A stretch of 64,000 nucleotides of DNA from Thalia democratica (lineage: Eukaryota), in assembly GCA_965202585.1 (NCBI GenBank), contig OZ241829.1, positions 36,332,001 to 36,396,000 on the forward strand, read 5' to 3'. A program made the translations under genes and the position numbers. Shown piece after piece: positions 94-63,745 of the stretch (positions within the stretch are counted from its first letter, which is position 1; each line of letters starts with the position of its first letter). The notes under the pieces were generated by a model that searched no databases, was not told the origin of the DNA, and saw only the letters and a program-made list of their open reading frames with translations.

Positions 94-23167
<23,074 letters not shown>

Positions 23168-34676: not shown

Positions 34677-42573
<7,897 letters not shown>

Positions 42574-47021: not shown

Positions 47022-48005
47022 TTACTTTATAGCTCTATTGTTTTGTATTTTTTGCAAATTGAATTTGTCAAAATCGCCTTTAGCCATAACATCTTTAATG
47101 ATCCAAGTTTGTTCATTCAAATTGTATATATACCATTTGTTACAACTGTAAGGTCGGCGTTCGCGAATAAAAACAATTTTGTTATTCAAACTCAATGTCT
47201 TACATACTTTTGAATTATCAAAATCAAACGGCAGCTTAAGACTAAACATAGTAAATTTTTTTGATATACTGTAATAAACTTTAGAAGACAATAATTTGTT
47301 TCCACCAATTACAAACGGTTTGTTACCAATTGTACAGGAGGAGTGATTATATCTACTTTCAATCATATCAGGTATAATGTTCCATTTGTTTTCTTTATGA
47401 TCAAAGAACTCTACTGATTTCAAACATCTGTAATAACCGAATCCTCCAGTAACAAAAATTTTCCCTTCAAAAATTGAACAAAATGTTTTATGCCTTTTAT
47501 ATTGAAAACTTGCTACTTGTCGCCAACTATCGTTTATCTTCTCATACCTATAATTTCTTTTTGTGTCTTTACTTTTTCTATAACACAAACTTATCACATA
47601 AACAGAACTTATAAATGATAAAACACTAAAAACTTCGTTATTTATTGATTGTAGTATTTTACTGGTTTTTGTCTTTTTAGAATACACCTCATAAGTGTTT
47701 TTCACATTTCCATCATCGTAGTAAGTACTAATAACGTAAGTATCCAATGGAGATTGTGTTTCTCATATGTGGTTTTGGTCGAATCACATATGAAACGTTA
47801 AAATAAATTAAAATGTGGCTTTAACAGGAGCATTAAAATCAGGACAACCTATAGTGACAACTTCCCTTTTGCAACCATTTTTTTTTCCAAAAACAGCAAT
47901 ATGAAACTGATCTTGATTGCAATAACGATTTTCATACAAAATTTTACACTTTACACTAGAAATCATCATTTTTGATATGCTAGCTTGTAAAATAAATAGC
48001 GACAA
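47022..48005 (-). pseudogene. kelch-repeat (BTB-kelch-type) gene fragment, intronless and disrupted
   Basis: ORFs 48005-47808 and 47747-47022 are in the same frame but separated by three stops (TAA 47810, TGA 47786, TGA 47765). The second ORF carries kelch repeats (EGKIFVTGG...LKSVEFFDHKENKWNIIPDMIESRYNHSSCTIGNKPFVIGG) and has no ATG start. Confidence 0.7.
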
Positions 48006-54200: not shown

Positions 54201-57200
54201 AATTGTGGACAGAAGCACGTCTTCCTCTTCCTCCATTCTCTTTCGGTCGTGGGTATTTCCCGATTTGTACCTGCGGGATGTAAAACAGACAGCTTGAATT
54301 TTTAGCCTATTTTTGGAGTTAGCATATGATACCAAATAATTAAAACTCTATGTGATTTTGAATTGGTTAAAAATTTATTTAGCTAGTCAACTCGGTGAAG
54401 TGAGTACTTTGGTAAAATAACATACACATTAAAAATATATATATAGACAAAGAACATATAATTTTATTTTTTGACATTAAAAACATAAGTCTACTATTAT
54501 TTTTTACCTATATAAATAACAATCAATGTTTTTCATAAAAGTTTTAATATGCTTTCACTGCAACTCATCAGAAACTTACTGCAGACATTTGAATATAATT
54601 TTATGTGATAGCACCATTAAATATGAATAAATGTTACATATTTTTCAATCTGTTCTTAAGTTTTTTTCAAACTTGTGTATATATTTAATAACTTACTGTT
54701 AAAAAATGTTCTTTTAACTGTAATTCAAATAAAAATTTGGAATTTTAAAAACTGCTTTAACCCGTTTAAAGTTTTAAATTTAATATCTGAAATTTTTTTT
54801 ACGTGTTTAAAAGGAAAATTTAGAAAGAATAGAAATATGTAACACAGTTTAAATAAATTAATCTAAATTAAAGTATACAATTCCTTTTATTAGAATTGGC
54901 ATTAAGTTTAAAACTTACGTATAATCAATAAAAGTTAAAACTTTCTTTCCCTTTTTTTTCTAGACACTCAACTTATTTTGAAAAGAAAGTCTTTGCATTT
55001 TAAACTTTAGTTTAAACTAATTAGCACTTCTAAAAACTATTCAAATAATAAAATTGTTTACTTTAATTAACTTAACTTAAAACTTATAATGTTACGTTTC
55101 TATTAAATTTACATTGGTCACAAAAAAAAATATTATGAAACATTTAAGTGTTTTTAAAACATGAAGTTCAAAAATTAAACAAAAAACATAAAAAATAGTA
55201 AAACCTTAATATAAAAAAGTTTTAAAATAGTATTAAAAATATTTATAAAATCAAGTAAGAAGTCAATTTAATTAGTGAATTTTAACAAAACTTCTCTCAA
55301 ATTAAATTGGAAAAAAGTTTTTGAAATGAAATGAATATGAACCTAAAATAACATAAGACTTTGAAGAAAAATATAACTTAGTTGGTTTTGTACCATTTCA
55401 TAAAATTTAAAAAAATAAGGGGCTAAAAATGTTACCGTTCAATCATGTCCATGGGGACTTGGTCCATGCCAACAGCGTCTCTTTCCATGGCAACCGAGTC
55501 GAGGAATGTGTCCTCCCAAAACTGCATCTTGTCCCACAGCTTCGATCTTTCCTTTGCTTAAAAAATATTGAATACTGAAATTTTAAATAAAAGACTGAAC
55601 TTCGAAGTCGACTTCAAAGCAATGACAGTTTTTTAACGTTCATCACAATTATTGAACTGTGTTATAAAGACAATGGTCTACAACAGCAATTCTCAACCTG
55701 GGTAAACTTGGGTAAACCCCCTTGGGGTAAATTAAGTTGTTTTAGGGGGTAAATATTCTTTATTACAAGTTGTGTAAATTAATGTTTATTAATTGAATGA
55801 ACTTTTTAGTTTATAAGATAGTTTTAATTGTTTTTTTAGTTAAATAAACTCTTTTAATTTTACGATTCTTTATATTTATTTAGCTTAAGTTTCAAAAAAT
55901 ATAATTTTCTTCCTCAAAAATAAACATTGTTTTGTATAGTAAAGGTAAATTTTATAACTACCTTCCAATAAGGAGTAAAACATGAAAGAAAGGATAATAA
56001 CCGCTTGTTTACAATATATAACAGCAAGTACAAAATAGTTTTGAACCATTACATTTGAAAATATTTATTTACACTAGAAGCCAATCTAAACTTCTAAGAT
56101 GCTTAACTGTGAATGTAAAATAAAAATATTCATCTTATTTTATGCATCTAAATTTTTAAAGTTATATAAATCATTTCAAAAATGCTAAATACCAAATTTT
56201 TTTATTTGATCTGTCAGCGGTAATGAAATAAATGACAAAATAAATTCATTGCAGGTTTATTTTATAATTAATTAGTTTCTAAAGGTAAAGTTTCTAAAGG
56301 ACATGTAAAATATTATTGTAATAAGTACGTGAATTGGTGATCTTTTCATCATTTTTAATCAAAAAAGTGAATTATATTACTATTTACTTTAAAATCTCAA
56401 TACCACTTACAAAGCTATGCTGAAAAATTACTAAAATAAAAATAATTATTTTTTTTTATTGTAACTTACTTAAATTAATTTCAAAATTAAAACCAATTAC
56501 TTTCTCTTAACACTTTTTTTATAATTTTTTAGTTAACTTAAAATGAAATACTACAATTAATGTACAAAATTAATATTCAATTTAATAATATCTTTACAAA
56601 ATAATGTTTCGCCCAGTAGAATTCTTCAGTTGTAATTAAGTTCAGAAAAATCAAAAAAATAAAAATATAAAGACATTAAGGCTTAACTTTAGTTTATAAA
56701 CTACATAACAAAATAAAAATAAAAAGCTAATAAAGACTATCATGTTAAAAGTACTATATTTACAACATTTATAACTATTATGTTTGAAGTTGTAACGGTA
56801 CATCAAAATGTATTTGAAACTGTTTTGTGTTTAAGGGAAAATCCCAGAATGAGACGCATGCAAATAATGATGCAATTTTAATAAAGTTTAGGTTAGGAGA
56901 AAATAAAGAGTAAAAACTCCTGATATAATTTTGAATAAAATTGAGAACGGATCTATATAAACCGGGTAGGAGTCTAATATGCACGAAGGGACACTTTTGC
57001 ACGAAGGGTCAAATATGCACGAAGGGACGTTTTTGCACGAAAACACTTTTGCACGGGTTGAAAACTTTTGTATTTTATTTACTTTGATTTTTTATATTTT
57101 TTTTTACTATCACTATTTACCCCTAACACTTACCCTCGGTCGGTTTTTTTTTTGTTTATTATAACTTACTTTTACTAATGTTTTTATTTTCTAGTATTTT

Positions 57201-60200
57201 TTTGATTAATAATTTTTATTAGGTTTTATTTACTTATTTTTACTATCACTGTTACCCTAACCCTTACTCTCAGTGGGTAACTTTTTTTATTCATTTATTA
57301 ATCTATCTTTCATTTTTATTTTTCTATTAATCTCGTGCAAAAATGACCTTTCGAGCAAAAATGACCCTTCATGCAAAAAGGACCCTTCGTGCAGAAAAGA
57401 CCCTTCGTGCAGAAAGGACCCCTCGTGCGGAATAAAACCCCTCGTGCAAAATTGTCCCTTAGTGCAAAAAAGTCTTCGTGCAAAAGTGTCTCTTTGTGCA
57501 TACTTGACCCGTTCCGATGTAAACCAGCCGCAGAGAGTGGTGGAAAGAATAGTGCCACAGTCTTGCTGCAGTAAACATGCATTTCCAGAATAGAAATTTT
57601 TATTGTTTTCTTGTGTTATATATTTTTTGTTTTCTTCTCATAAGTGTCTTTATAAATTTAAGTTCAAGCAGTTAATTCTCTCTCTAATTTAAACATTCTC
57701 AAAATATAAGTATTTAGATTTAATTGTGTTTAAAGGTTTAAAAACAATTTATTTAAAACATTTTAAAGTAAAGTTTATACTTGTTAGTGTTTTCAATTGT
57801 TCTTTAATACAATTCAATATCTTGCCTAGTTTTATATAGAGTAGCCCTAAATACTTTTTGATATCAGCATTAGTTAACTCAAGTTTAAATTTAATTATGG
57901 TTGCTTGTGTTGGTGTGTTATGTATTCTAACCATTCAATTAACCTAATAAGTTTGTTATTTAAGTAACCTACATCCATGGGTTACAAAGTACTATATTCA
58001 TAAAATGATTAGTTTGTACATAAAAATTTCAAAATCAATATAAACATATTTGTAGATAACAAACATTTTTGTAAACACTCGCAATCTAGAAGAATTCAAT
58101 AAAATATGAAGATGAAGTGTTTAAACTTTTAAGTATCATTACAATATTATTGAGTTTTGTACTAGAATTCGAAGTTTTACAGCTATCAACTTAGCAGTGA
58201 AACTTTGAACCATCGTCGGCAAAGCCGAGATCATCACAATTATCTATATAATAAGCAATATTGCAAACAGTTGTAATAGGTGATACTTTTAACAGACGAT
58301 TTGGTGCAATATATGTATTTTTAAATTTTACATGAACACATCATGCAATGACAACACCGATATAAAGATTTTACACACTTATTGTCGATTGGTTGTTGGT
58401 CATGTGACTTATGTTCTTTGCTGTTTCCATGGCGACTTCTTCAAGGTGCAACATTAAGTTGTTGCGGAATATTCCTTGAATTTGATTAATTGTAACTCAA
58501 ACTTATATAAAAGTATCAACTTACATAATTGTTAAATTTAAAATATAAACATTCAAAATAAATATAACTTAAAAATTTGCTTTGAAGTGTATCAAATGAT
58601 AATTATCAAAGTTTAATGTTTGGTAATATGTGTGGGCGTCTGCTTTACAAGGTTGATTGTTTACTTGTTGTAGATTTTTTTACGTTTAGTATTTGTGCAA
58701 CTATTTGTAAAAAGACTTGTTAAATACACCACACAAATTTAACTTACATAAACCGATAAAATGAACCAATTTAATATCAAGTTTTTATGATTTATCAGTT
58801 TACCAGTGAACATAAAAATAGCAACTAGGTAATCAAACTAGTTTAGTGATTCTTTTATAAATTATTTAGAAAACATTATTTTTTAACAGTAGATATTAAG
58901 AACTAAAAAAAAAACAGTGTCCATTATTCTTTTTGGAATTTAATTAGTTTGAAATCTTAATAAAACAGTTTTAAAATTATAAGGTTTAGCAGTAATAGTA
59001 GTAGTGTTTACATTTAAAATTTGTTAACTTTAACACTTTTTTGGTTAACTTAATGAGGAATCGGTACTATACAAGATTTAAATTCAGTATTTACAAATAT
59101 ATAAACTATTAAAACATACAAACTGATAGTATTAGGAGAGTGTGTGAAGTTTCATAAACAAATAATCTACAGCACATACCAAGCAATCCTTCATAGAGGA
59201 ATACTCGTTCCTCATCGTCGTCAATATCCGAGTTGACTCTGATCAGCTTCTTGTTGCGGTACCTGACATCCTGTTGCTGCGAACTCGAATCTGATCTCAT
59301 TGACAAGTTGTCCTACAATGTTCAACTTGTTAACAAACGTTTAATTTTTTATTAGTAATAAGGTAAATATTTTAAGTCAGTTTGGTCTTTTTTTTCTTGA
59401 GAGGTACCATTTTACTTTTTTTTTTGTAAAAAACTTGAACTAAGTAAAAAAATAAATCGTCATGAATATTTTTCTGATAACACAAATTATAAACAAATTT
59501 TTCGAAATAAAATTTTGAGCAAGCTTCCAATGTTTGCAAAAAAAAGTAAAAAATAATTAATATTCTAAGTGAAAAAGTATCATTCAGCTTATAAACAAAA
59601 ATTTTACTTTAAATTCATTGTGAATCATTTTAGTAGTAAAACTGCTTTCCCATGAGCTAATTTACTGTACATTTTTTCTTGTATAATTTTAATTTAGTTT
59701 AAGAGTAACAACAAAAGATCTTAGTTTGCACCAGAGCAGAAAATTTACAAACTCGTAAATCAAGAAATTAATACTTTTTTATTTATGAAAAACTAAACAA
59801 AAAATTCTACAACTTAGTGATGAACAAAAAATTAAAGTTCTGAGTTTAAAAAAAAAGATTTTATCGAAATTAAAATAAACTTAATACTAAATTTAAAAAC
59901 TATGATGTTTATTAGACTAGTAAAACTGAAGCTTTACTCAAAGTTATGTTTTAACATTAATTTTTTTAGAATACTTGCTACTATGTTTTTAATATTATAT
60001 CGGATATTGGAAGAGCATCTATTTTTAAAACTGTTGTTTAGGAGATTAAAGAAGTATAAACGTGTTTATAATCAGATGAAAAACAAGGTATTAATTAAAA
60101 AATTTTTGCTTTGAACATCTAGATATGTTTCGAAAACGTAATGTAATTAAAATCGTAGTATGAAATTTTTTACTTTAGTTTTAAATATATGGGCAAAAAA

Positions 60201-63200
60201 ATGACTGAATTAAAAAGTGTAACTTTTAAAAACTAATTATAAGCAAAGAAAAAAGAAAATATCTAAATAGCTTTAGGTTAGTAAGTGATGCTTGTAATAA
60301 CAAAAAAATCAAGATGTTTGACAAAATTATGCACCTACTGTTTTAAACAAATTAAATTAAAATAAATTGTAAATAAGTTAAGCACAGACGGATTAAAATT
60401 ATTTTGTTGTTGGTTTTTGTTGTCCAGATCAATATTTTCCAAAATAAGGGAAAAATTTTCAACCACCAAAAATTCAAATAATATGTTTAATAAATCATTT
60501 TCTATATACTAAAACCTAGTTATAAAAAAATATACGCTCAAACATCAACCTTTAAACAAATATTTTACAAAAATAAAAGTTCTTAAGACAAAAACTTAAT
60601 CAGTTTTTCATTAAATTATTAGAAAAGTAATCAAGCAACCGATACAAACAGAAATTTTCAATACCAGATAGTGTTAAAAGAATTAAAAAAAAGCTTATAA
60701 TTTTATTAAAAACCAGCTGTTCAAAAAATTATTAAAACATACAAACTACTAGGAGAATAAATAATAATACTTTAAATAAACTTTCAGTAACTACTTTTGT
60801 AAAAGTCTATAAAACAAACTAAAACTGAGTAAAATTTAGTAACTTGATTAAGTAAGTAAACTGAAAGAATGTGCTTAAAAAATGTTCAAAAAATCAAAAT
60901 CTTGCTAAAAGTAAACAAAATTAAACAGCAGATTATGATATGAACCATTTACCTTGAAATTCAGCTGGAAAGATCTCTATAATTAAATTAAGAATTTTTT
61001 GCGATTGAGCTTTATTTAACATTTTTATATACAAGTATTAAGTTAATAAAAATTTAAACAACATAGAGTAATTTTAAGATGTTGTTTATTCTTAAAAGTA
61101 AAACTTAAACACTTTATTAAGCCAGCTAAAATTATAATTTACATTTATAATTATAATTTACAACTATCTGCACAAAAATAGTTGATGCTTACTTTAAAGT
61201 ATGCGTTATACTTAAGCTTTCAATACTTTCTATAAGAAAATAGCGTTAGCTATATTTATAAAATTATACTTAAAAACTATGAAGAGTTTTACAAACATTT
61301 CACAATATAAACTACTAGTCCCTAAACTTTAAAAACAGTCTATTTGATTTTTAGAAAAACAGCAAACATTATTTAAAACTTACTAATTCGTATGCAATTC
61401 TTGCTGGGAAACTGCGTACACTCGAGCTGTCTTTAGATGAAAGTGAAGAATCTGGACAAAAACATTTTGGTGTGATACAGAACTATAAAGTTAGTTAGAA
61501 CTTATCTTAAATTGAAAAATACTGTCTAACATGTACATGCAAAACATTCGAAGCTGATCAGCACTGTACAAGAAAAATCAGCTTAACGATCATGCAGGTT
61601 AAAACAAAAGCGTTGAAGAACAATAAAGTCAGCAAAAAAACTGTTCGTAACAGGGTTGCCAAAATTTTTTTTAATATTTATTTTTCAGGTTTTCTGAATT
61701 ACTTCCAGGTTTTTAAAAGTTTTTTTTTCTATTTCTAGCGTAGAATTAAATGTAACGTACAAAACTGTGCTAAATAGGATAAAACATTGAAAAGATAATG
61801 TAATGCTACTTTAAATGTTTTTTATAGTAAATAAAATTAAAAAAAGTGCAAAAAAAATTGTTTATAGATTTTCGTATCTAATCTAAATTTCATTATTCTA
61901 CATGCAAAATTCAATGATTTTTCAAAATTTATCAAATTCGAGATTTTTTCAGGTTTTTTGGCAACCCTGTCGTATAAAAAACCAACCAATGCTTGAAACA
62001 GTTTCGACATCTGAAACTTTTTCGCTCTCATCGCTCGTCTTAGCTTCTCTGCCATCCTCCAACGAGGACGGGTGAGGGGGAACTTTAGGGGGGATTTTAT
62101 TCTTTGTTGGCGCTTTCACTTCTTTTTTGAATATTTTAATATAAGTAAGCGAAATGAACTTAATCAGTTAAAATGCAATCATTCAACGTGCTGTTTATAT
62201 ATTTTGAAGAGAACAAAACAATGGTAACATGTCGACCATGCAGACGAAAATCATTTCACAAAAACACACTCATTCTGACTAAAAAAGCAAAAACAAACCT
62301 TTCGCATAATAGTGGGTGTGGCATATTTCGAGGAGGTTGAGGGCGCTCGCCATGCCGCCCAGCCCGTTCCTCATGTTGAAGGTGGACTCGAGGCCGGTGA
62401 CGACGCACTTCAGCAGGTCCAGCATGCCCTTGTACACTTTCAACCCGATTTCCTGCGTCAAATCGATATTGCATTACTTTAACGTGAACGGTTCAACTTT
62501 TTAAAATATTTAAACCGATCATTGCAGCTTTTTTTTATTAGCTTATTTAGTTTACACGTGATAAAACAAAAGCTTATAGATGTTTAATTTTTTAAGAATG
62601 CGTGTTTTGTATTGCTCGGTATTTTTTTACTAAAATACTTTTATTAGTTATTTAGATTCATCATTAATTCATAGTAGATCTAAACTTGCTTTCTGAAAAC
62701 TTCAAGTAGTTTATCACACTAATTCAAACAAAAGAGATTTCCAAGGTTAAACAGATGCATTGACGGTTGAAAAACATTTAATTATTTATAAATTCAGCGA
62801 CAAAAAACCCATTTGGAACTTTAAAACCACCAGCTTTATAAAATATAAGTCTTTAACATTTAAGTTAAACACATATCTATTTAAACTTAGCAAAAAAGTA
62901 GAAAACCTAAATGTTTATTCAGTTCATATTACTGTAACTTTGTCATTAAAAATTATTTCAATAAAAATCTATAACTAAAATTAAATAAAAATTATTTCAA
63001 TAAAAATCTATAACTAAAATTAAATAAAAATATTTCTTTTAATCGAAAATTTCAAAATAAATAAGGAAAATTTATTATCATTATTTCTAATTTATGATGT
63101 ACTTAATAAAAAAATAATACAAATGTAAACTTATACCATTATTCATAGGACTATACAGAAGCAATACATATTAAAATAAAATACTAAATGTTTGCAAAAT

Positions 63201-63745
63201 TTTCTAAACTTATAAATTTGATATTTTGTTTTACACTAAGAGACTTCAACTACAAGCTTGATTTAAAAATTTAAAGTTAATTAGAAAAAATTTAAAAATT
63301 TAAACTTTTACAACTGATGTCTTTTCCAATGAAAAATATGTAATAAAGTATCAAAAAATTTGTAGAAGTTGCTTTAGCAATCATAAATAGTTTAGACGTA
63401 CTAACTGGTTAAAAACTAAATCGATAATTTTAGTGGTAGAATTTATAGTATTTTGAGCATTTTAAAATAATAAAACACATTATTACGAATACTTCATGCA
63501 CATTTTAGTCCAAAACAAATCAACTACTTGCAAACCTATGAACGGCGATTAAACTACTTACTCATAAAACAATCTACAAAACTCACAATGTCTTCCACGT
63601 ACTCGGTGTTGGCTTCGTCTTGCGTCGACTGGTTGAGCCGCTGCAGCAGAAATATTCTCAGCGACTCGCACTCCATCAGCCTCCTGACCTTCTTGAAGTT
63701 AAACCAGCCCACTCCTTGCCCGTCCAACACGCTTTTGGTTATTTC
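51224..63745 (-). CDS. MADD: MAP kinase-activating death domain protein (MADD/DENN/Rab3 GEF, aex-3 orthologue); 5'-partial, C-terminal ~540 aa
   Basis: Minus-strand core exons 63745-63587, 62452-62299, 62121-61987, 61451-61384, 59312-59180, 55556-55436, 54270-54138, 53424-53233, 53049-52885, 52430-52370, 52014-51908, 51671-51602, 51348-51224 (TAA); 1623 nt in frame. Motifs [127 protein letters not shown]. Confidence 0.95.
55684..56006. mobile_element. hAT-type MITE, same family as 44801-45117, opposite orientation
   Basis: CAGCAATTCTCAACCT start, GGGGTAAA repeats; 8-bp flanks GTCTACAA / GTTTACAA. Confidence 0.75.
56964..57516. mobile_element. MULE-like MITE with arrays of 16-18-bp GCACGAAG subterminal repeats
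   Basis: Imperfect TIRs GGGTAGGAGTCTAATATGCAC / CGGAACGGGTCAAGTATGCAC. Near-perfect 9-bp flanking duplication ATATAAACC / ATGTAAACC. Confidence 0.85.
58379..58474 (-). CDS. MADD: candidate alternative MADD cassette exon (66 or 96 nt, phase 1 to 1)
   Basis: caag|GA acceptor at 58474. Reads (G)[21 protein letters not shown], with in-frame donors at 58409 (gtcaca) and 58379 (gtgtgt). It falls exactly between EGLL and KERS, where vertebrate MADD has an optional [9 protein letters not shown]-containing exon (recalled, not aligned). Confidence 0.7.
60953..60976 (-). CDS. MADD: candidate 24-nt MADD microexon (RSFQLNFK, phase 0 to 0)
   Basis: tttaattatag|AGATCTTTCCAGCTGAATTTCAAG|gtaaat; stop-free in the frame required by the flanking phase-0 junction. 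Confidence 0.45.
61651..61969. mobile_element. MITE with CAGGGTTGCCAAAA termini (reverse orientation of the 41059 family)
   Basis: Perfect 14-bp TIR; flanks TCGTAA / TCGTAT. Confidence 0.8.
62947..63031. repeat. 39-bp perfect tandem duplication
   Basis: TAAAAATTATTTCAATAAAAATCTATAACTAAAATTAAA twice (62947-62985, 62986-63024) plus a partial third copy. Confidence 0.9.

What the first reader, a model, noticed from the sequence alone, without database searches (positions are those of the whole stretch)
58379..58474. Hidden MADD cassette exon resembling the vertebrate neural-isoform exon, with tandem donors and a downstream UGCAUG
Seen: an unannotated phase 1-to-1 exon encoding (G)[21 protein letters not shown](T), placed between EGLL and KERSKLW. 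It has two in-frame donors 30 nt apart (58409, 58379) and a perfect UGCAUG at 58347-58342 just downstream. Established, from recall: human MADD has optional exons in neural-enriched isoforms, including a [22 protein letters not shown] segment at this position, and Rbfox sites downstream of an exon promote inclusion. Inference: this alternative exon and its regulation predate vertebrates.
Basis: partly seen in the sequence, partly recalled or inferred. Interest (0 to 1): 0.7.

Follow-up and report, generated by a model that had tools for sequence, protein, structure and literature searches.

The report
Real MADD cassette exon, pelagic tunicate
The flagged 96 bases are a genuine, transcribed coding exon of a tunicate's MADD (Rab3 exchange factor) gene and the counterpart of the regulated "exon 26" of vertebrate MADD, so this small optional exon is older than vertebrates; how it is regulated here is still untested.

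Summary
Window 58474-58379 (minus strand) is a real exon of a pelagic tunicate's MADD gene.

- **Transcript evidence.** A spliced 4,991-nt metatranscriptome contig from a close relative (exons 93-99% identical) joins 59180>58474 and 58379>55556 exactly. It therefore carries the long, distal-donor form.
- **Homology.** The first 66 nt match, in position, phase (1-1), length and sequence, a 66-nt cassette that RefSeq models of Ciona and Clavelina either include or skip. They also match the 63-nt vertebrate MADD exon 26 (..[13 protein letters not shown]..), a known regulated cassette. The exon therefore dates at least to the tunicate-vertebrate ancestor.
- **Tandem donors.** The proximal GT lies exactly at the ancestral exon end but reads GTCACA, a poor donor. 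Only the distal donor is seen in RNA, so a 30-nt donor shift is more likely than two active donors.
- **Skipping and tissue.** Neither could be tested, because no RNA runs exist for this organism.
- **Rbfox motif.** GCAUG lies within 40 nt downstream of the cassette in all three tunicates, and after almost no other exon of the gene. One bird has none there, so regulation shared with vertebrates is not shown.
- **Side lead.** Amphioxus carries a splice-competent partial copy of the next exon in the same intron, which hints at an origin by exon duplication.

The parts
59180..59312 (-). Upstream constitutive MADD exon (...[28 protein letters not shown]+G), ends in phase 1; donor GTATGT at 59179
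   Evidence: Sequence. Aligned to transcript contig L001 at q2943-3075. Junction 59180>58474.
58475..58476 (-). Acceptor AG of the cassette. It follows a purine-rich, weak polypyrimidine tract (aattaatcaaattcaAG).
   Evidence: Used in L001.
58409..58474 (-). Ancestral 66-nt core of the cassette, (G)[21 protein letters not shown]. Same length, phase and position as the 66-nt ascidian cassette; the vertebrate exon 26 is 63 nt.
58379..58408 (-). Lineage-specific 30-nt extension ([10 protein letters not shown]), coding in the only transcript seen
   Evidence: L001 q3075-3171 equals 58475-58379 at 96/97 identity, and the one difference is synonymous (TCG/TCA). Absent from ascidian and vertebrate proteins.
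58407..58408 (-). Proximal GT (ATAA|GTCACA), at the ancestral exon end. Poor donor consensus; no transcript evidence.
58377..58378 (-). Distal donor GT (ATAA|GTGTGT), the donor used in the transcript contig
   Evidence: Junction 58379>55556 in L001.
58342..58347 (-). UGCAUG, intron +32..+37 after the distal donor. Candidate Rbfox-type intronic splicing enhancer.
   Evidence: It is the only GCAUG within +40 of any of the 11 donors of the gene in this window. GCAUG lies at +10/+25 in Clavelina and UGCAUG at +14 in Ciona. Identical in organism B's contig.
55436..55556 (-). Downstream constitutive exon ([40 protein letters not shown]), entered in phase 1. It leads into the MADD death domain.

Best explanation
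Shown:
- The window carries the 3' third of the MADD / Rab3 guanine-nucleotide-exchange-factor gene of a pelagic tunicate, on the minus strand.
- Positions 58474-58379 are a true coding exon. It is spliced in phase 1-1 between the ...YEGLL and KERSKLW... exons and adds 32 residues about 30 residues before the death domain.
- Its first 66 nt are orthologous to the 66-nt cassette exon of ascidian MADD and to the 63-nt vertebrate MADD exon 26.

Inferred:
1. As in ascidians and vertebrates, the exon is optional here.
2. In this lineage the ancestral donor (now GTCACA at 58408) decayed, and splicing moved 30 nt downstream to GTGTGT. This lengthened the insert by 10 residues.
3. Inclusion of this weak-acceptor exon is promoted by an Rbfox-family protein bound to the (U)GCAUG 32 nt downstream, following the usual rule that downstream Rbfox sites enhance inclusion.
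4. At the protein level the insert (core LE-x-x-A-M/L-ET, possibly a short helix) tunes the linker before the death and PH domains in secretory cells. In mouse islets, forced skipping of exon 26 lowers insulin secretion.

My odds:
- Real, orthologous exon: about 0.95.
- Optional in this species: about 0.7.
- Rbfox-dependent: about 0.5.
- Proximal donor also used: about 0.2.
For: Transcript:
- Protein P0153 is encoded on a 4,991-nt JGI contig (L001). That contig aligns to 13 successive window exons at 91.5-99.2% identity, with GT-AG introns removed.
- It reads ...[44 protein letters not shown]....
- All differences between L001 and the window in the three exons around the cassette are synonymous.

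Homology:
- Ascidian proteins carry G[TG][AG]K[HS]S..MQLEGAALETTFNLS at the same junction.
- The exon is 66 nt in Ciona and Clavelina genomic DNA, in the same phase.
- MAFFT aligns all cassettes, with L, E, A and E invariant.
- In cross-clade scans the cassette is the top intron hit: 44, 41 and 40 against a background of 30 or less.

Optional use in relatives:
- Clavelina isoforms X4/X5 and Ciona isoforms X6/X7/X8 lack the cassette, while the other isoforms have it.
- Sharks, rays and teleosts also show both forms.
- Mouse and human exon 26 is a regulated cassette (PMC7397853; PMC11321995).

Tunicate identity: P0153 sits inside tunicates with 100/100 support.

Rbfox element:
- GCAUG lies within +40 of the cassette donor in all three tunicates.
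- It follows only 1 of 11 (window), 3 of 30 (Ciona) and 1 of 31 (Clavelina) donors of the gene.
- In organism B's contig there are no differences across 58304-58484, against 4 differences in the next 202 nt.
Against: - No skipped or short-form transcript of this species was found. The single transcript is from a related population or species and retains one other intron, so it is not a fully processed mRNA.
- Ascidian isoforms are annotation models, not experiments.
- A pigeon has no GCAUG in the 361-nt intron after its exon 26 and has one UGCAUG 235 nt upstream.
- I found no paper that links Rbfox directly to this exon.
- The AlphaFold model of the region is of low confidence over the insert (pLDDT 26-42), so the structural role is a guess.
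- Narrow profile HMMs built without the window's own sequence do not reach significance (best E 0.9). The homology argument therefore rests on position, phase and length plus pairwise scores.
Confidence: 0.7

Rival explanations
1. The exon is real but constitutive in this tunicate: always included and never skipped. It would then be an ordinary coding exon that a gene model may simply have missed.
For: The only transcript seen includes it. No skipped form turned up in the protein or contig searches.
Against: Its orthologues are modelled as optional in two ascidians and are experimentally optional in mammals. It has a weak, purine-rich acceptor region and a conserved downstream GCAUG, as regulated exons do. 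One transcript cannot show that skipping is absent.
Confidence: 0.25
2. Both donors are active. The exon would then exist as a 66-nt and a 96-nt form that differ by [10 protein letters not shown].
For: Both GTs are in frame. The proximal one sits exactly where ascidians end the exon.
Against: The proximal site reads UAA|GUCACA, with C at +3 and no G at +5. None of the 11 donors of this gene that L001 confirms has C at +3. The only transcript uses the distal site. The single difference in the extension between L001 and the window is synonymous, which fits coding use, although one change is weak evidence.
Confidence: 0.2
3. The UGCAUG is not an Rbfox enhancer. The exon is controlled by other factors (for example Nova, PTBP, CELF or SR proteins, or simply by its weak splice sites), and the motif is there by chance or for another reason.
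For: It is a single hexamer. A pigeon lacks any GCAUG downstream of its exon 26. I found no direct Rbfox-MADD exon 26 report. Three of the gene's nine UGCAUGs lie in a very high-copy repeat, so part of the local enrichment is not regulatory.
Against: GCAUG within +40 of the cassette donor recurs in three tunicates whose introns are otherwise unalignable, and it is rare after other donors of the same gene. The product of the per-donor rates is about 3e-4. In the medulloblastoma study the RBFOX motif was enriched downstream of the class of exons that includes MADD exon 26, which is indirect support.
Confidence: 0.4
4. It is a chance open frame or pseudo-exon with no biological use.
For: The segment is short, and leave-one-out HMMs are not significant.
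Against: It is spliced into a transcript with exact junctions. It is orthologous in position, phase and length to annotated exons in other tunicates and in vertebrates.
Confidence: 0.02

Closest known systems
Vertebrate MADD (IG20/DENN/Rab3GEP) exon 26, the 63-nt cassette encoding RDKGS[MV][13 protein letters not shown][ILM]S
   Same: Same gene and same intron (between ...YEGLL|G and KERS.LW...). Same phase 1-1. Length 63 nt against a 66-nt core. Shared LE[EDG][AV]A[ML]ET core. It lies shortly before the death domain.
   Different: The window's first half has diverged (IFRNNLMLH against RDKGSMWDQ). The exon is 30 nt longer here through a downstream donor. Regulated use and tissue pattern are known in mammals but untested here. 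The one vertebrate intron I read lacks the downstream GCAUG.
Ascidian MADD cassette (Ciona intestinalis isoforms X1-X5, X9 and X10 against X6-X8; Clavelina lepadiformis X1-X3 and X6 against X4/X5; Phallusia mammillata)
   Same: Closest relatives. A 66-nt exon with the same boundaries as 58474-58409. Gap-free alignment over 21 residues. (U)GCAUG within 40 nt downstream.
   Different: Ascidians keep a good donor (GTAATT, GTAAAC) at the 66-nt end and have no 10-residue extension. Their peptide is nearly invariant (MQLEGAALETTFNLS), whereas this long-branch tunicate has diverged.
Rbfox-activated cassette exons with a downstream intronic (U)GCAUG
   Same: A perfect UGCAUG 32 nt downstream, a weak acceptor, a synaptic/secretory gene, and a motif that recurs in related species.
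   Different: No binding, knock-down or tissue data. A single motif copy. Not conserved into the bird I examined.
Alternative exons born by tandem exon duplication
   Same: The vertebrate cassette aligns with the start of its own downstream exon: [16 protein letters not shown] against KERSTLWDQMQFWEDAFLD, reached by 33 of 20,000 shuffles. Amphioxus has an intronic phase 1-1 partial copy of that exon at the same place.
   Different: Duplicated exons are usually mutually exclusive, whereas this one is a cassette added next to its parent. In tunicates the similarity to the parent exon is nearly gone.

Membership tests
MADD / Rab3 GEP gene | uDENN and DENN domains plus the MADD-type death domain in one protein | tested here: met
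   Pfam on P0153: uDENN 29-96, DENN 211-436, Death_MADD 1062-1137. The death-domain and PH exons lie in the window. The N-terminal part lies beyond the window's end.
MADD / Rab3 GEP gene | Groups with MADD orthologues of related animals | tested here: met
   ML tree: inside tunicates with 100/100 support, 63% identity to Ciona intestinalis MADD.
MADD exon-26-type cassette | Lies in the intron between the ...YEGLL|G exon and the KERS.LW exon, phase 1-1 | tested here: met
   Same layout in Ciona, Clavelina and pigeon genomic DNA.
MADD exon-26-type cassette | Length of about 63-66 nt and the core motif LE[EDG][AV]A[ML]ET | tested here: met
   66-nt core, with 96 nt as actually spliced. Shuffle tests: 0 of 20,000 against Ciona, 4 of 20,000 against vertebrate. 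Alignment A1. Cross-clade intron scan.
MADD exon-26-type cassette | Both included and skipped mRNAs exist | not testable with these tools
   No RNA run for this organism and only one transcript contig, which includes the exon. Skipped isoforms are annotated in Ciona and Clavelina and known in vertebrates.
MADD exon-26-type cassette | Neural or neuroendocrine enrichment of inclusion | not testable with these tools
   No tissue RNA data. For mammals, PMC3994957 states that the KIAA0358 and IG20-SV4 isoforms are neuronal/neuroendocrine. That these isoforms carry exon 26 is my recollection; I could not read it here.
Rbfox-activated cassette exon | (U)GCAUG in the proximal downstream intron | tested here: met
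   UGCAUG at +32..+37. It is the only donor of 11 in the window's gene part with GCAUG within +40.
Rbfox-activated cassette exon | Motif kept at the orthologous exon in other species | tested here: inconclusive
   Kept in Ciona (+14) and Clavelina (+10 and +25). Absent from the pigeon's 361-nt downstream intron. Other vertebrate loci could not be fetched.
Rbfox-activated cassette exon | Inclusion depends on an Rbfox protein; an Rbfox gene is present | not testable with these tools
   No expression or perturbation data. A six-frame search of the genome with Pfam Fox-1_C found nothing, but it also rang in no control, so it says nothing.
Tandem alternative 5' splice sites | Two in-frame donors, both used | tested here: inconclusive
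   Both GTs are present. Only the distal one is used in the one transcript. The proximal one reads GUCACA.

The most novel reading that the evidence does not exclude
The optional MADD exon (vertebrate exon 26) arose in the chordate ancestor as a partial tandem copy of the first ~20 codons of the following exon.

- Amphioxus still carries a splice-competent, little-diverged copy at L004:38629-38706. It is phase 1-1 and encodes LERTSIWDQIPFWDEDSEISTPTILTPD.
- Vertebrates keep the S-x-WDQ-LED trace of that copy.
- Tunicates keep only the LE..A.ET core.
- In tunicates the exon came under a conserved downstream GCAUG (Rbfox-type) enhancer, and this pelagic lineage then moved the donor 30 nt.

If so, one small regulated insert before the death domain of the Rab3 exchange factor has been maintained for more than 500 million years.
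Probability: 0.35. Interest if true: 0.5.

Novelty: new member of a known kind. Interest (0 to 1): 0.35.

Why it matters
MADD is the Rab3/Rab27 exchange factor of regulated secretion. In mouse, its exon 26 changes insulin secretion when forced out (PMC7397853), yet nobody knows what the 21 residues do.

Finding the same exon, still optional in sea-squirt gene models, in the sister group of vertebrates has three consequences:
- The insert has been under selection since before vertebrates.
- The residues that matter narrow to L-E-x-x-A-[ML]-E-T.
- Ciona becomes a tractable system (electroporated minigenes, Rbfox knock-down) to ask how the exon is controlled and what it does.

For genome annotation it is one more example of a short real exon that is easy to miss. 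It is not a new kind of element. The vertebrate exon is published and the ascidian isoforms are already in RefSeq.

Tried and rejected
- **RNA evidence in this species.** The look-up of sequencing runs returned only three DNA contig runs and no RNA. Laying them gave no junctions of interest, only variants and a high-copy intronic repeat.
- **Protein search with a 151-aa piece around the cassette**, aimed at fragmentary skipped or short isoforms: nothing.
- **Search with the full protein restricted to this region**: no second protein of this species.
- **Degenerate DNA pattern for WDKMQFWED in metagenome contigs**: three arthropod or unrelated loci, with no intron at this place.
- **Profile HMMs of the cassette.** They find the exon when the window is in the model, which is circular. 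Leave-one-out they are not significant, so their blanks in amphioxus, Ptychodera and a bivalve prove little. I replaced them with pairwise cross-clade scans.
- **AlphaFold2 on the C-terminal 326 residues with 9 sequences**: mean pLDDT 56 and 26-42 over the insert, with a helix drawn at low confidence. No structural claim is made.
- **More vertebrate loci** for the GCAUG test (two frogs, a lemming) and the Ptychodera X2 and Clavelina X3 products: not on record.
- **Pfam Fox-1_C in the own genome**: uninformative.
- **Literature.** No paper in the library ties Rbfox to MADD exon 26 or describes the exon in tunicates. The MAPK docking motif reported in MADD is at residues 809-815, not in the cassette.
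Full report
**What is in the sequence**

On the minus strand the window carries the 3' part of a MADD gene. The genome is very AT-rich, 23-39% G+C in 2-kb bins.

- The exon ...[28 protein letters not shown] ends with a lone G at 59180, before GTATGT.
- After AG at 58476-5 an open frame starts at 58474.
- With the carried-over G it reads [22 protein letters not shown] up to 58409, followed by GTCACA.
- If read on, it continues [10 protein letters not shown] up to 58379, followed by GTGTGT.
- TGCATG lies at 58347-58342.
- The next exon starts at 55556 after TTTTTTAAG and reads [40 protein letters not shown].

**It is a real exon**

I used the 39-residue downstream exon as a handle against 1.84 billion representative proteins. 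That gave 250 MADD hits. Two of the best 150 carried an insert between EGLL-G and KERS:
- P0001, Clavelina lepadiformis.

A follow-up search brought P0153, a 1,328-residue protein from a 4,991-nt JGI contig (sample 3300019144, fetched as L001). A protein of that length on a contig of that size cannot contain introns.

blastn of L001 on the window gives 13 collinear blocks at 91.5-99.2% identity. Refining the block ends to GT-AG gives the junctions 59180>58474 and 58379>55556, with 0 and 1 mismatch in the flanking 16 nt. So a spliced RNA of a very close relative contains the exon in its long, 96-nt form.

Across the three exons, every difference between L001 and the window is synonymous: five in the upstream exon, one in the cassette (TCG/TCA, inside the extension) and one in the downstream exon.

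One caveat applies. L001 still holds one intron further 3' (about 52360-52010), so it is not a fully processed mRNA, and the last ~60 residues of P0153 are intron-derived.

**Whose gene it is**

In a maximum-likelihood tree P0153 falls inside tunicates with 100/100 support. It is on a long branch and is 63% identical to Ciona intestinalis MADD. Earlier notes of this scan also call the genome a pelagic tunicate. The assembly is 802 Mb.

**Homology of the exon**

Ciona, Clavelina and Phallusia proteins have G[TG][AG]K[HS]S..MQLEGAALETTFNLS at the same junction.

In genomic DNA the ascidian exon is 66 nt and phase 1-1 (Ciona L002:9255-9320, Clavelina L003:11247-11312). Its end corresponds exactly to the window's proximal GT.

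Vertebrates from rays to mammals have RDK[GSA]S[MV][11 protein letters not shown][FL]S[ILM]S. That exon is 63 nt in human (PMC11321995) and encodes residues 1287-1308 in mouse (PMC7397853). The mouse figure agrees with the position in the mouse protein P0239.

The evidence that the window's peptide is homologous:
- Against Ciona it scores 41 with no gap, over residues 2-22 of both. No shuffle of 20,000 reaches that.
- Against the vertebrate peptide it scores 30, reached by 4 of 20,000 shuffles.
- MAFFT places all cassettes in the same columns, with L, E, A and E invariant and the 10-residue extension unique to this lineage.
- Scanning each species' intron with the other clades' cassettes recovers the true exon as the top hit: window 44, Ciona 41, pigeon 40, against a background of 30 or less.
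- Narrow HMMs built without the window do not reach significance. I therefore rest the homology on position, phase, length and the pairwise scores.

**Is it optional?**

In relatives, yes.
- Clavelina isoforms X4 and X5 and Ciona isoforms X6, X7 and X8 lack the cassette, while their other isoforms have it.
- Rays and teleosts show both forms.
- In mouse beta cells and human medulloblastoma cells, exon 26 inclusion is regulated. Antisense-forced skipping in mouse islets lowered glucose-stimulated insulin secretion.

For this species I could not test it. No RNA run holds the stretch, and no further transcript or protein of the species exists in the collections I could search. The exon's acceptor region is purine-rich and weak compared with its neighbours, as expected for a regulated exon.

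**The two donors**

The proximal site is where ascidians end the exon, with good donors (GTAATT, GTAAAC). Here it reads UAA|GUCACA. None of the 11 donors of this gene that L001 confirms has C at +3.

The distal site, UAA|GUGUGU, is the one used. The simplest reading is that the ancestral donor decayed and splicing shifted 30 nt downstream, rather than two donors working side by side. A minor use of the proximal site is not excluded.

**The UGCAUG**

- In the window it is the only GCAUG within 40 nt of any of the 11 confirmed donors.
- Ciona has UGCAUG at +14 of its cassette. Clavelina has GCAUG at +10 and +25.
- GCAUG within +40 follows only 3 of 30 donors in the Ciona gene and 1 of 31 in the Clavelina gene, the cassette included.
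- The chance that the same exon shows it in all three species is of the order of 3e-4 from these per-donor rates.
- No GCAUG lies in the upstream intron of any of the three.
- In organism B's DNA contig, the 181 nt covering the exon, both donors and the UGCAUG show no difference, while the next 202 nt of intron show four. This is weak but in the same direction.

This supports a conserved Rbfox-type downstream enhancer within tunicates.

It does not extend to the one vertebrate locus I could read. The pigeon cassette (L010:22028-22090) has no GCAUG in its 361-nt downstream intron and has one UGCAUG 235 nt upstream. Other vertebrate loci were not on record.

In the literature I found only indirect support. 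In medulloblastoma cells the RBFOX motif is enriched downstream of exons that OTX2 represses, a class that includes MADD exon 26. No paper stated a direct Rbfox effect on this exon.

**Protein context**

The insert is residues 1001-1032 of P0153, and the Pfam death domain starts at 1062. An AlphaFold2 model draws a helix over [18 protein letters not shown] but with pLDDT of 26-42, so I make no structural claim.

**How far back it goes**

Annotated MADD of amphioxus, the acorn worm Ptychodera (three isoforms), the starfish Patiria, molluscs and others go straight from EG[LI][LIV]-G to K[ED][RK]S. Arthropods have no intron there.

The intron of Ptychodera (818 nt) and of the bivalve Tegillarca (1,156 nt) holds nothing similar.

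The 6.1-kb amphioxus intron does hold a candidate, L004:38629-38706:
- It is 78 nt, with an AG before it and a GT after it, in phase 1-1.
- It encodes LERTSIWDQIPFWDEDSEISTPTILTPD.
- It is a clear partial copy of the start of the following exon (score 48, reached by 0 of 20,000 shuffles).
- It also resembles the vertebrate cassette (score 35, reached by 19 of 20,000 shuffles).

The vertebrate cassette in turn aligns with the start of its own following exon: [16 protein letters not shown] against KERSTLWDQMQFWEDAFLD, score 37, reached by 33 of 20,000 shuffles. The window's cassette faintly does the same (LEEVAME against LDSVAME, reached by 108 of 20,000 shuffles). Ascidians do not.

This suggests, but does not prove, that the cassette began as a tandem partial duplicate of the next exon in an early chordate. 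Whether the amphioxus copy is expressed is unknown.

**Verdict**

The claim that the exon predates vertebrates is supported to the tunicate-vertebrate ancestor. Shared Rbfox regulation, neural specificity and dual donor use remain untested or only partly supported.

The thing itself is a new member of a known kind. It is the orthologue of a published vertebrate cassette and of exons already present in ascidian RefSeq models, with a lineage-specific 30-nt donor shift.

Noticed in passing
window 56850-57900 (intron between the cassette and the KERSKLW exon): A very high-copy repeat. Summed contig depth is 1e4-1e5 against about 70-110 for the flanks in all three DNA runs, with many internal joints. 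Three of the gene's minus-strand UGCAUGs (56857, 57370, 57576) lie inside it, so they are probably not regulatory.
   Followed up: partly
window 61384-63745, minus strand: Three consecutive MADD exons (ending 63587, 62299 and 61987) each have a UGCAUG 57-87 nt downstream; none of the five exons 3' of the cassette does. The 154-nt exon (62452-62299) also has a downstream GCAUG in its apparent 154-nt counterparts in Ciona (+23) and Clavelina (+79). In the whole window TGCATG occurs 28 times against 17.0 +/- 4.0 expected, and all nine copies between 56857 and 63500 are on the gene's strand. This bears on the sibling finding s1-301541.
   Followed up: partly
L001 about 3850-4200 = window about 52360-52010, minus strand: The metatranscriptome contig retains the intron between ...EKAASRYNG and [31 protein letters not shown]... 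As a result the called protein P0153 ends in intron-derived residues, and a second ORF carries the PH_MADD part.
   Followed up: yes
L004:38629-38706 (Branchiostoma lanceolatum MADD intron): A splice-competent phase 1-1 candidate exon that is a partial copy of the start of the next exon (LERTSIWDQIPFWDED...). It is absent from the annotated protein P0141. A UGCAUG lies about 87 nt upstream of it.
   Followed up: partly
window 47022-47747, minus strand: An uninterrupted 241-residue ORF just 3' of MADD. Its repeats look kelch-like to the eye (…GGFGYYRCLKSVEFFDHKENKWNIIPDMIESRYNHSSCTIGNKPFVIGG…), so it may be an intronless gene.
   Followed up: no
window 12001-14000 and 40001-42000: G+C rises to 0.39 and 0.33 against a background of about 0.26. 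ORFs on the plus strand at 40195-40530 and 41755-42096 suggest exons of another gene upstream on the opposite strand.
   Followed up: no
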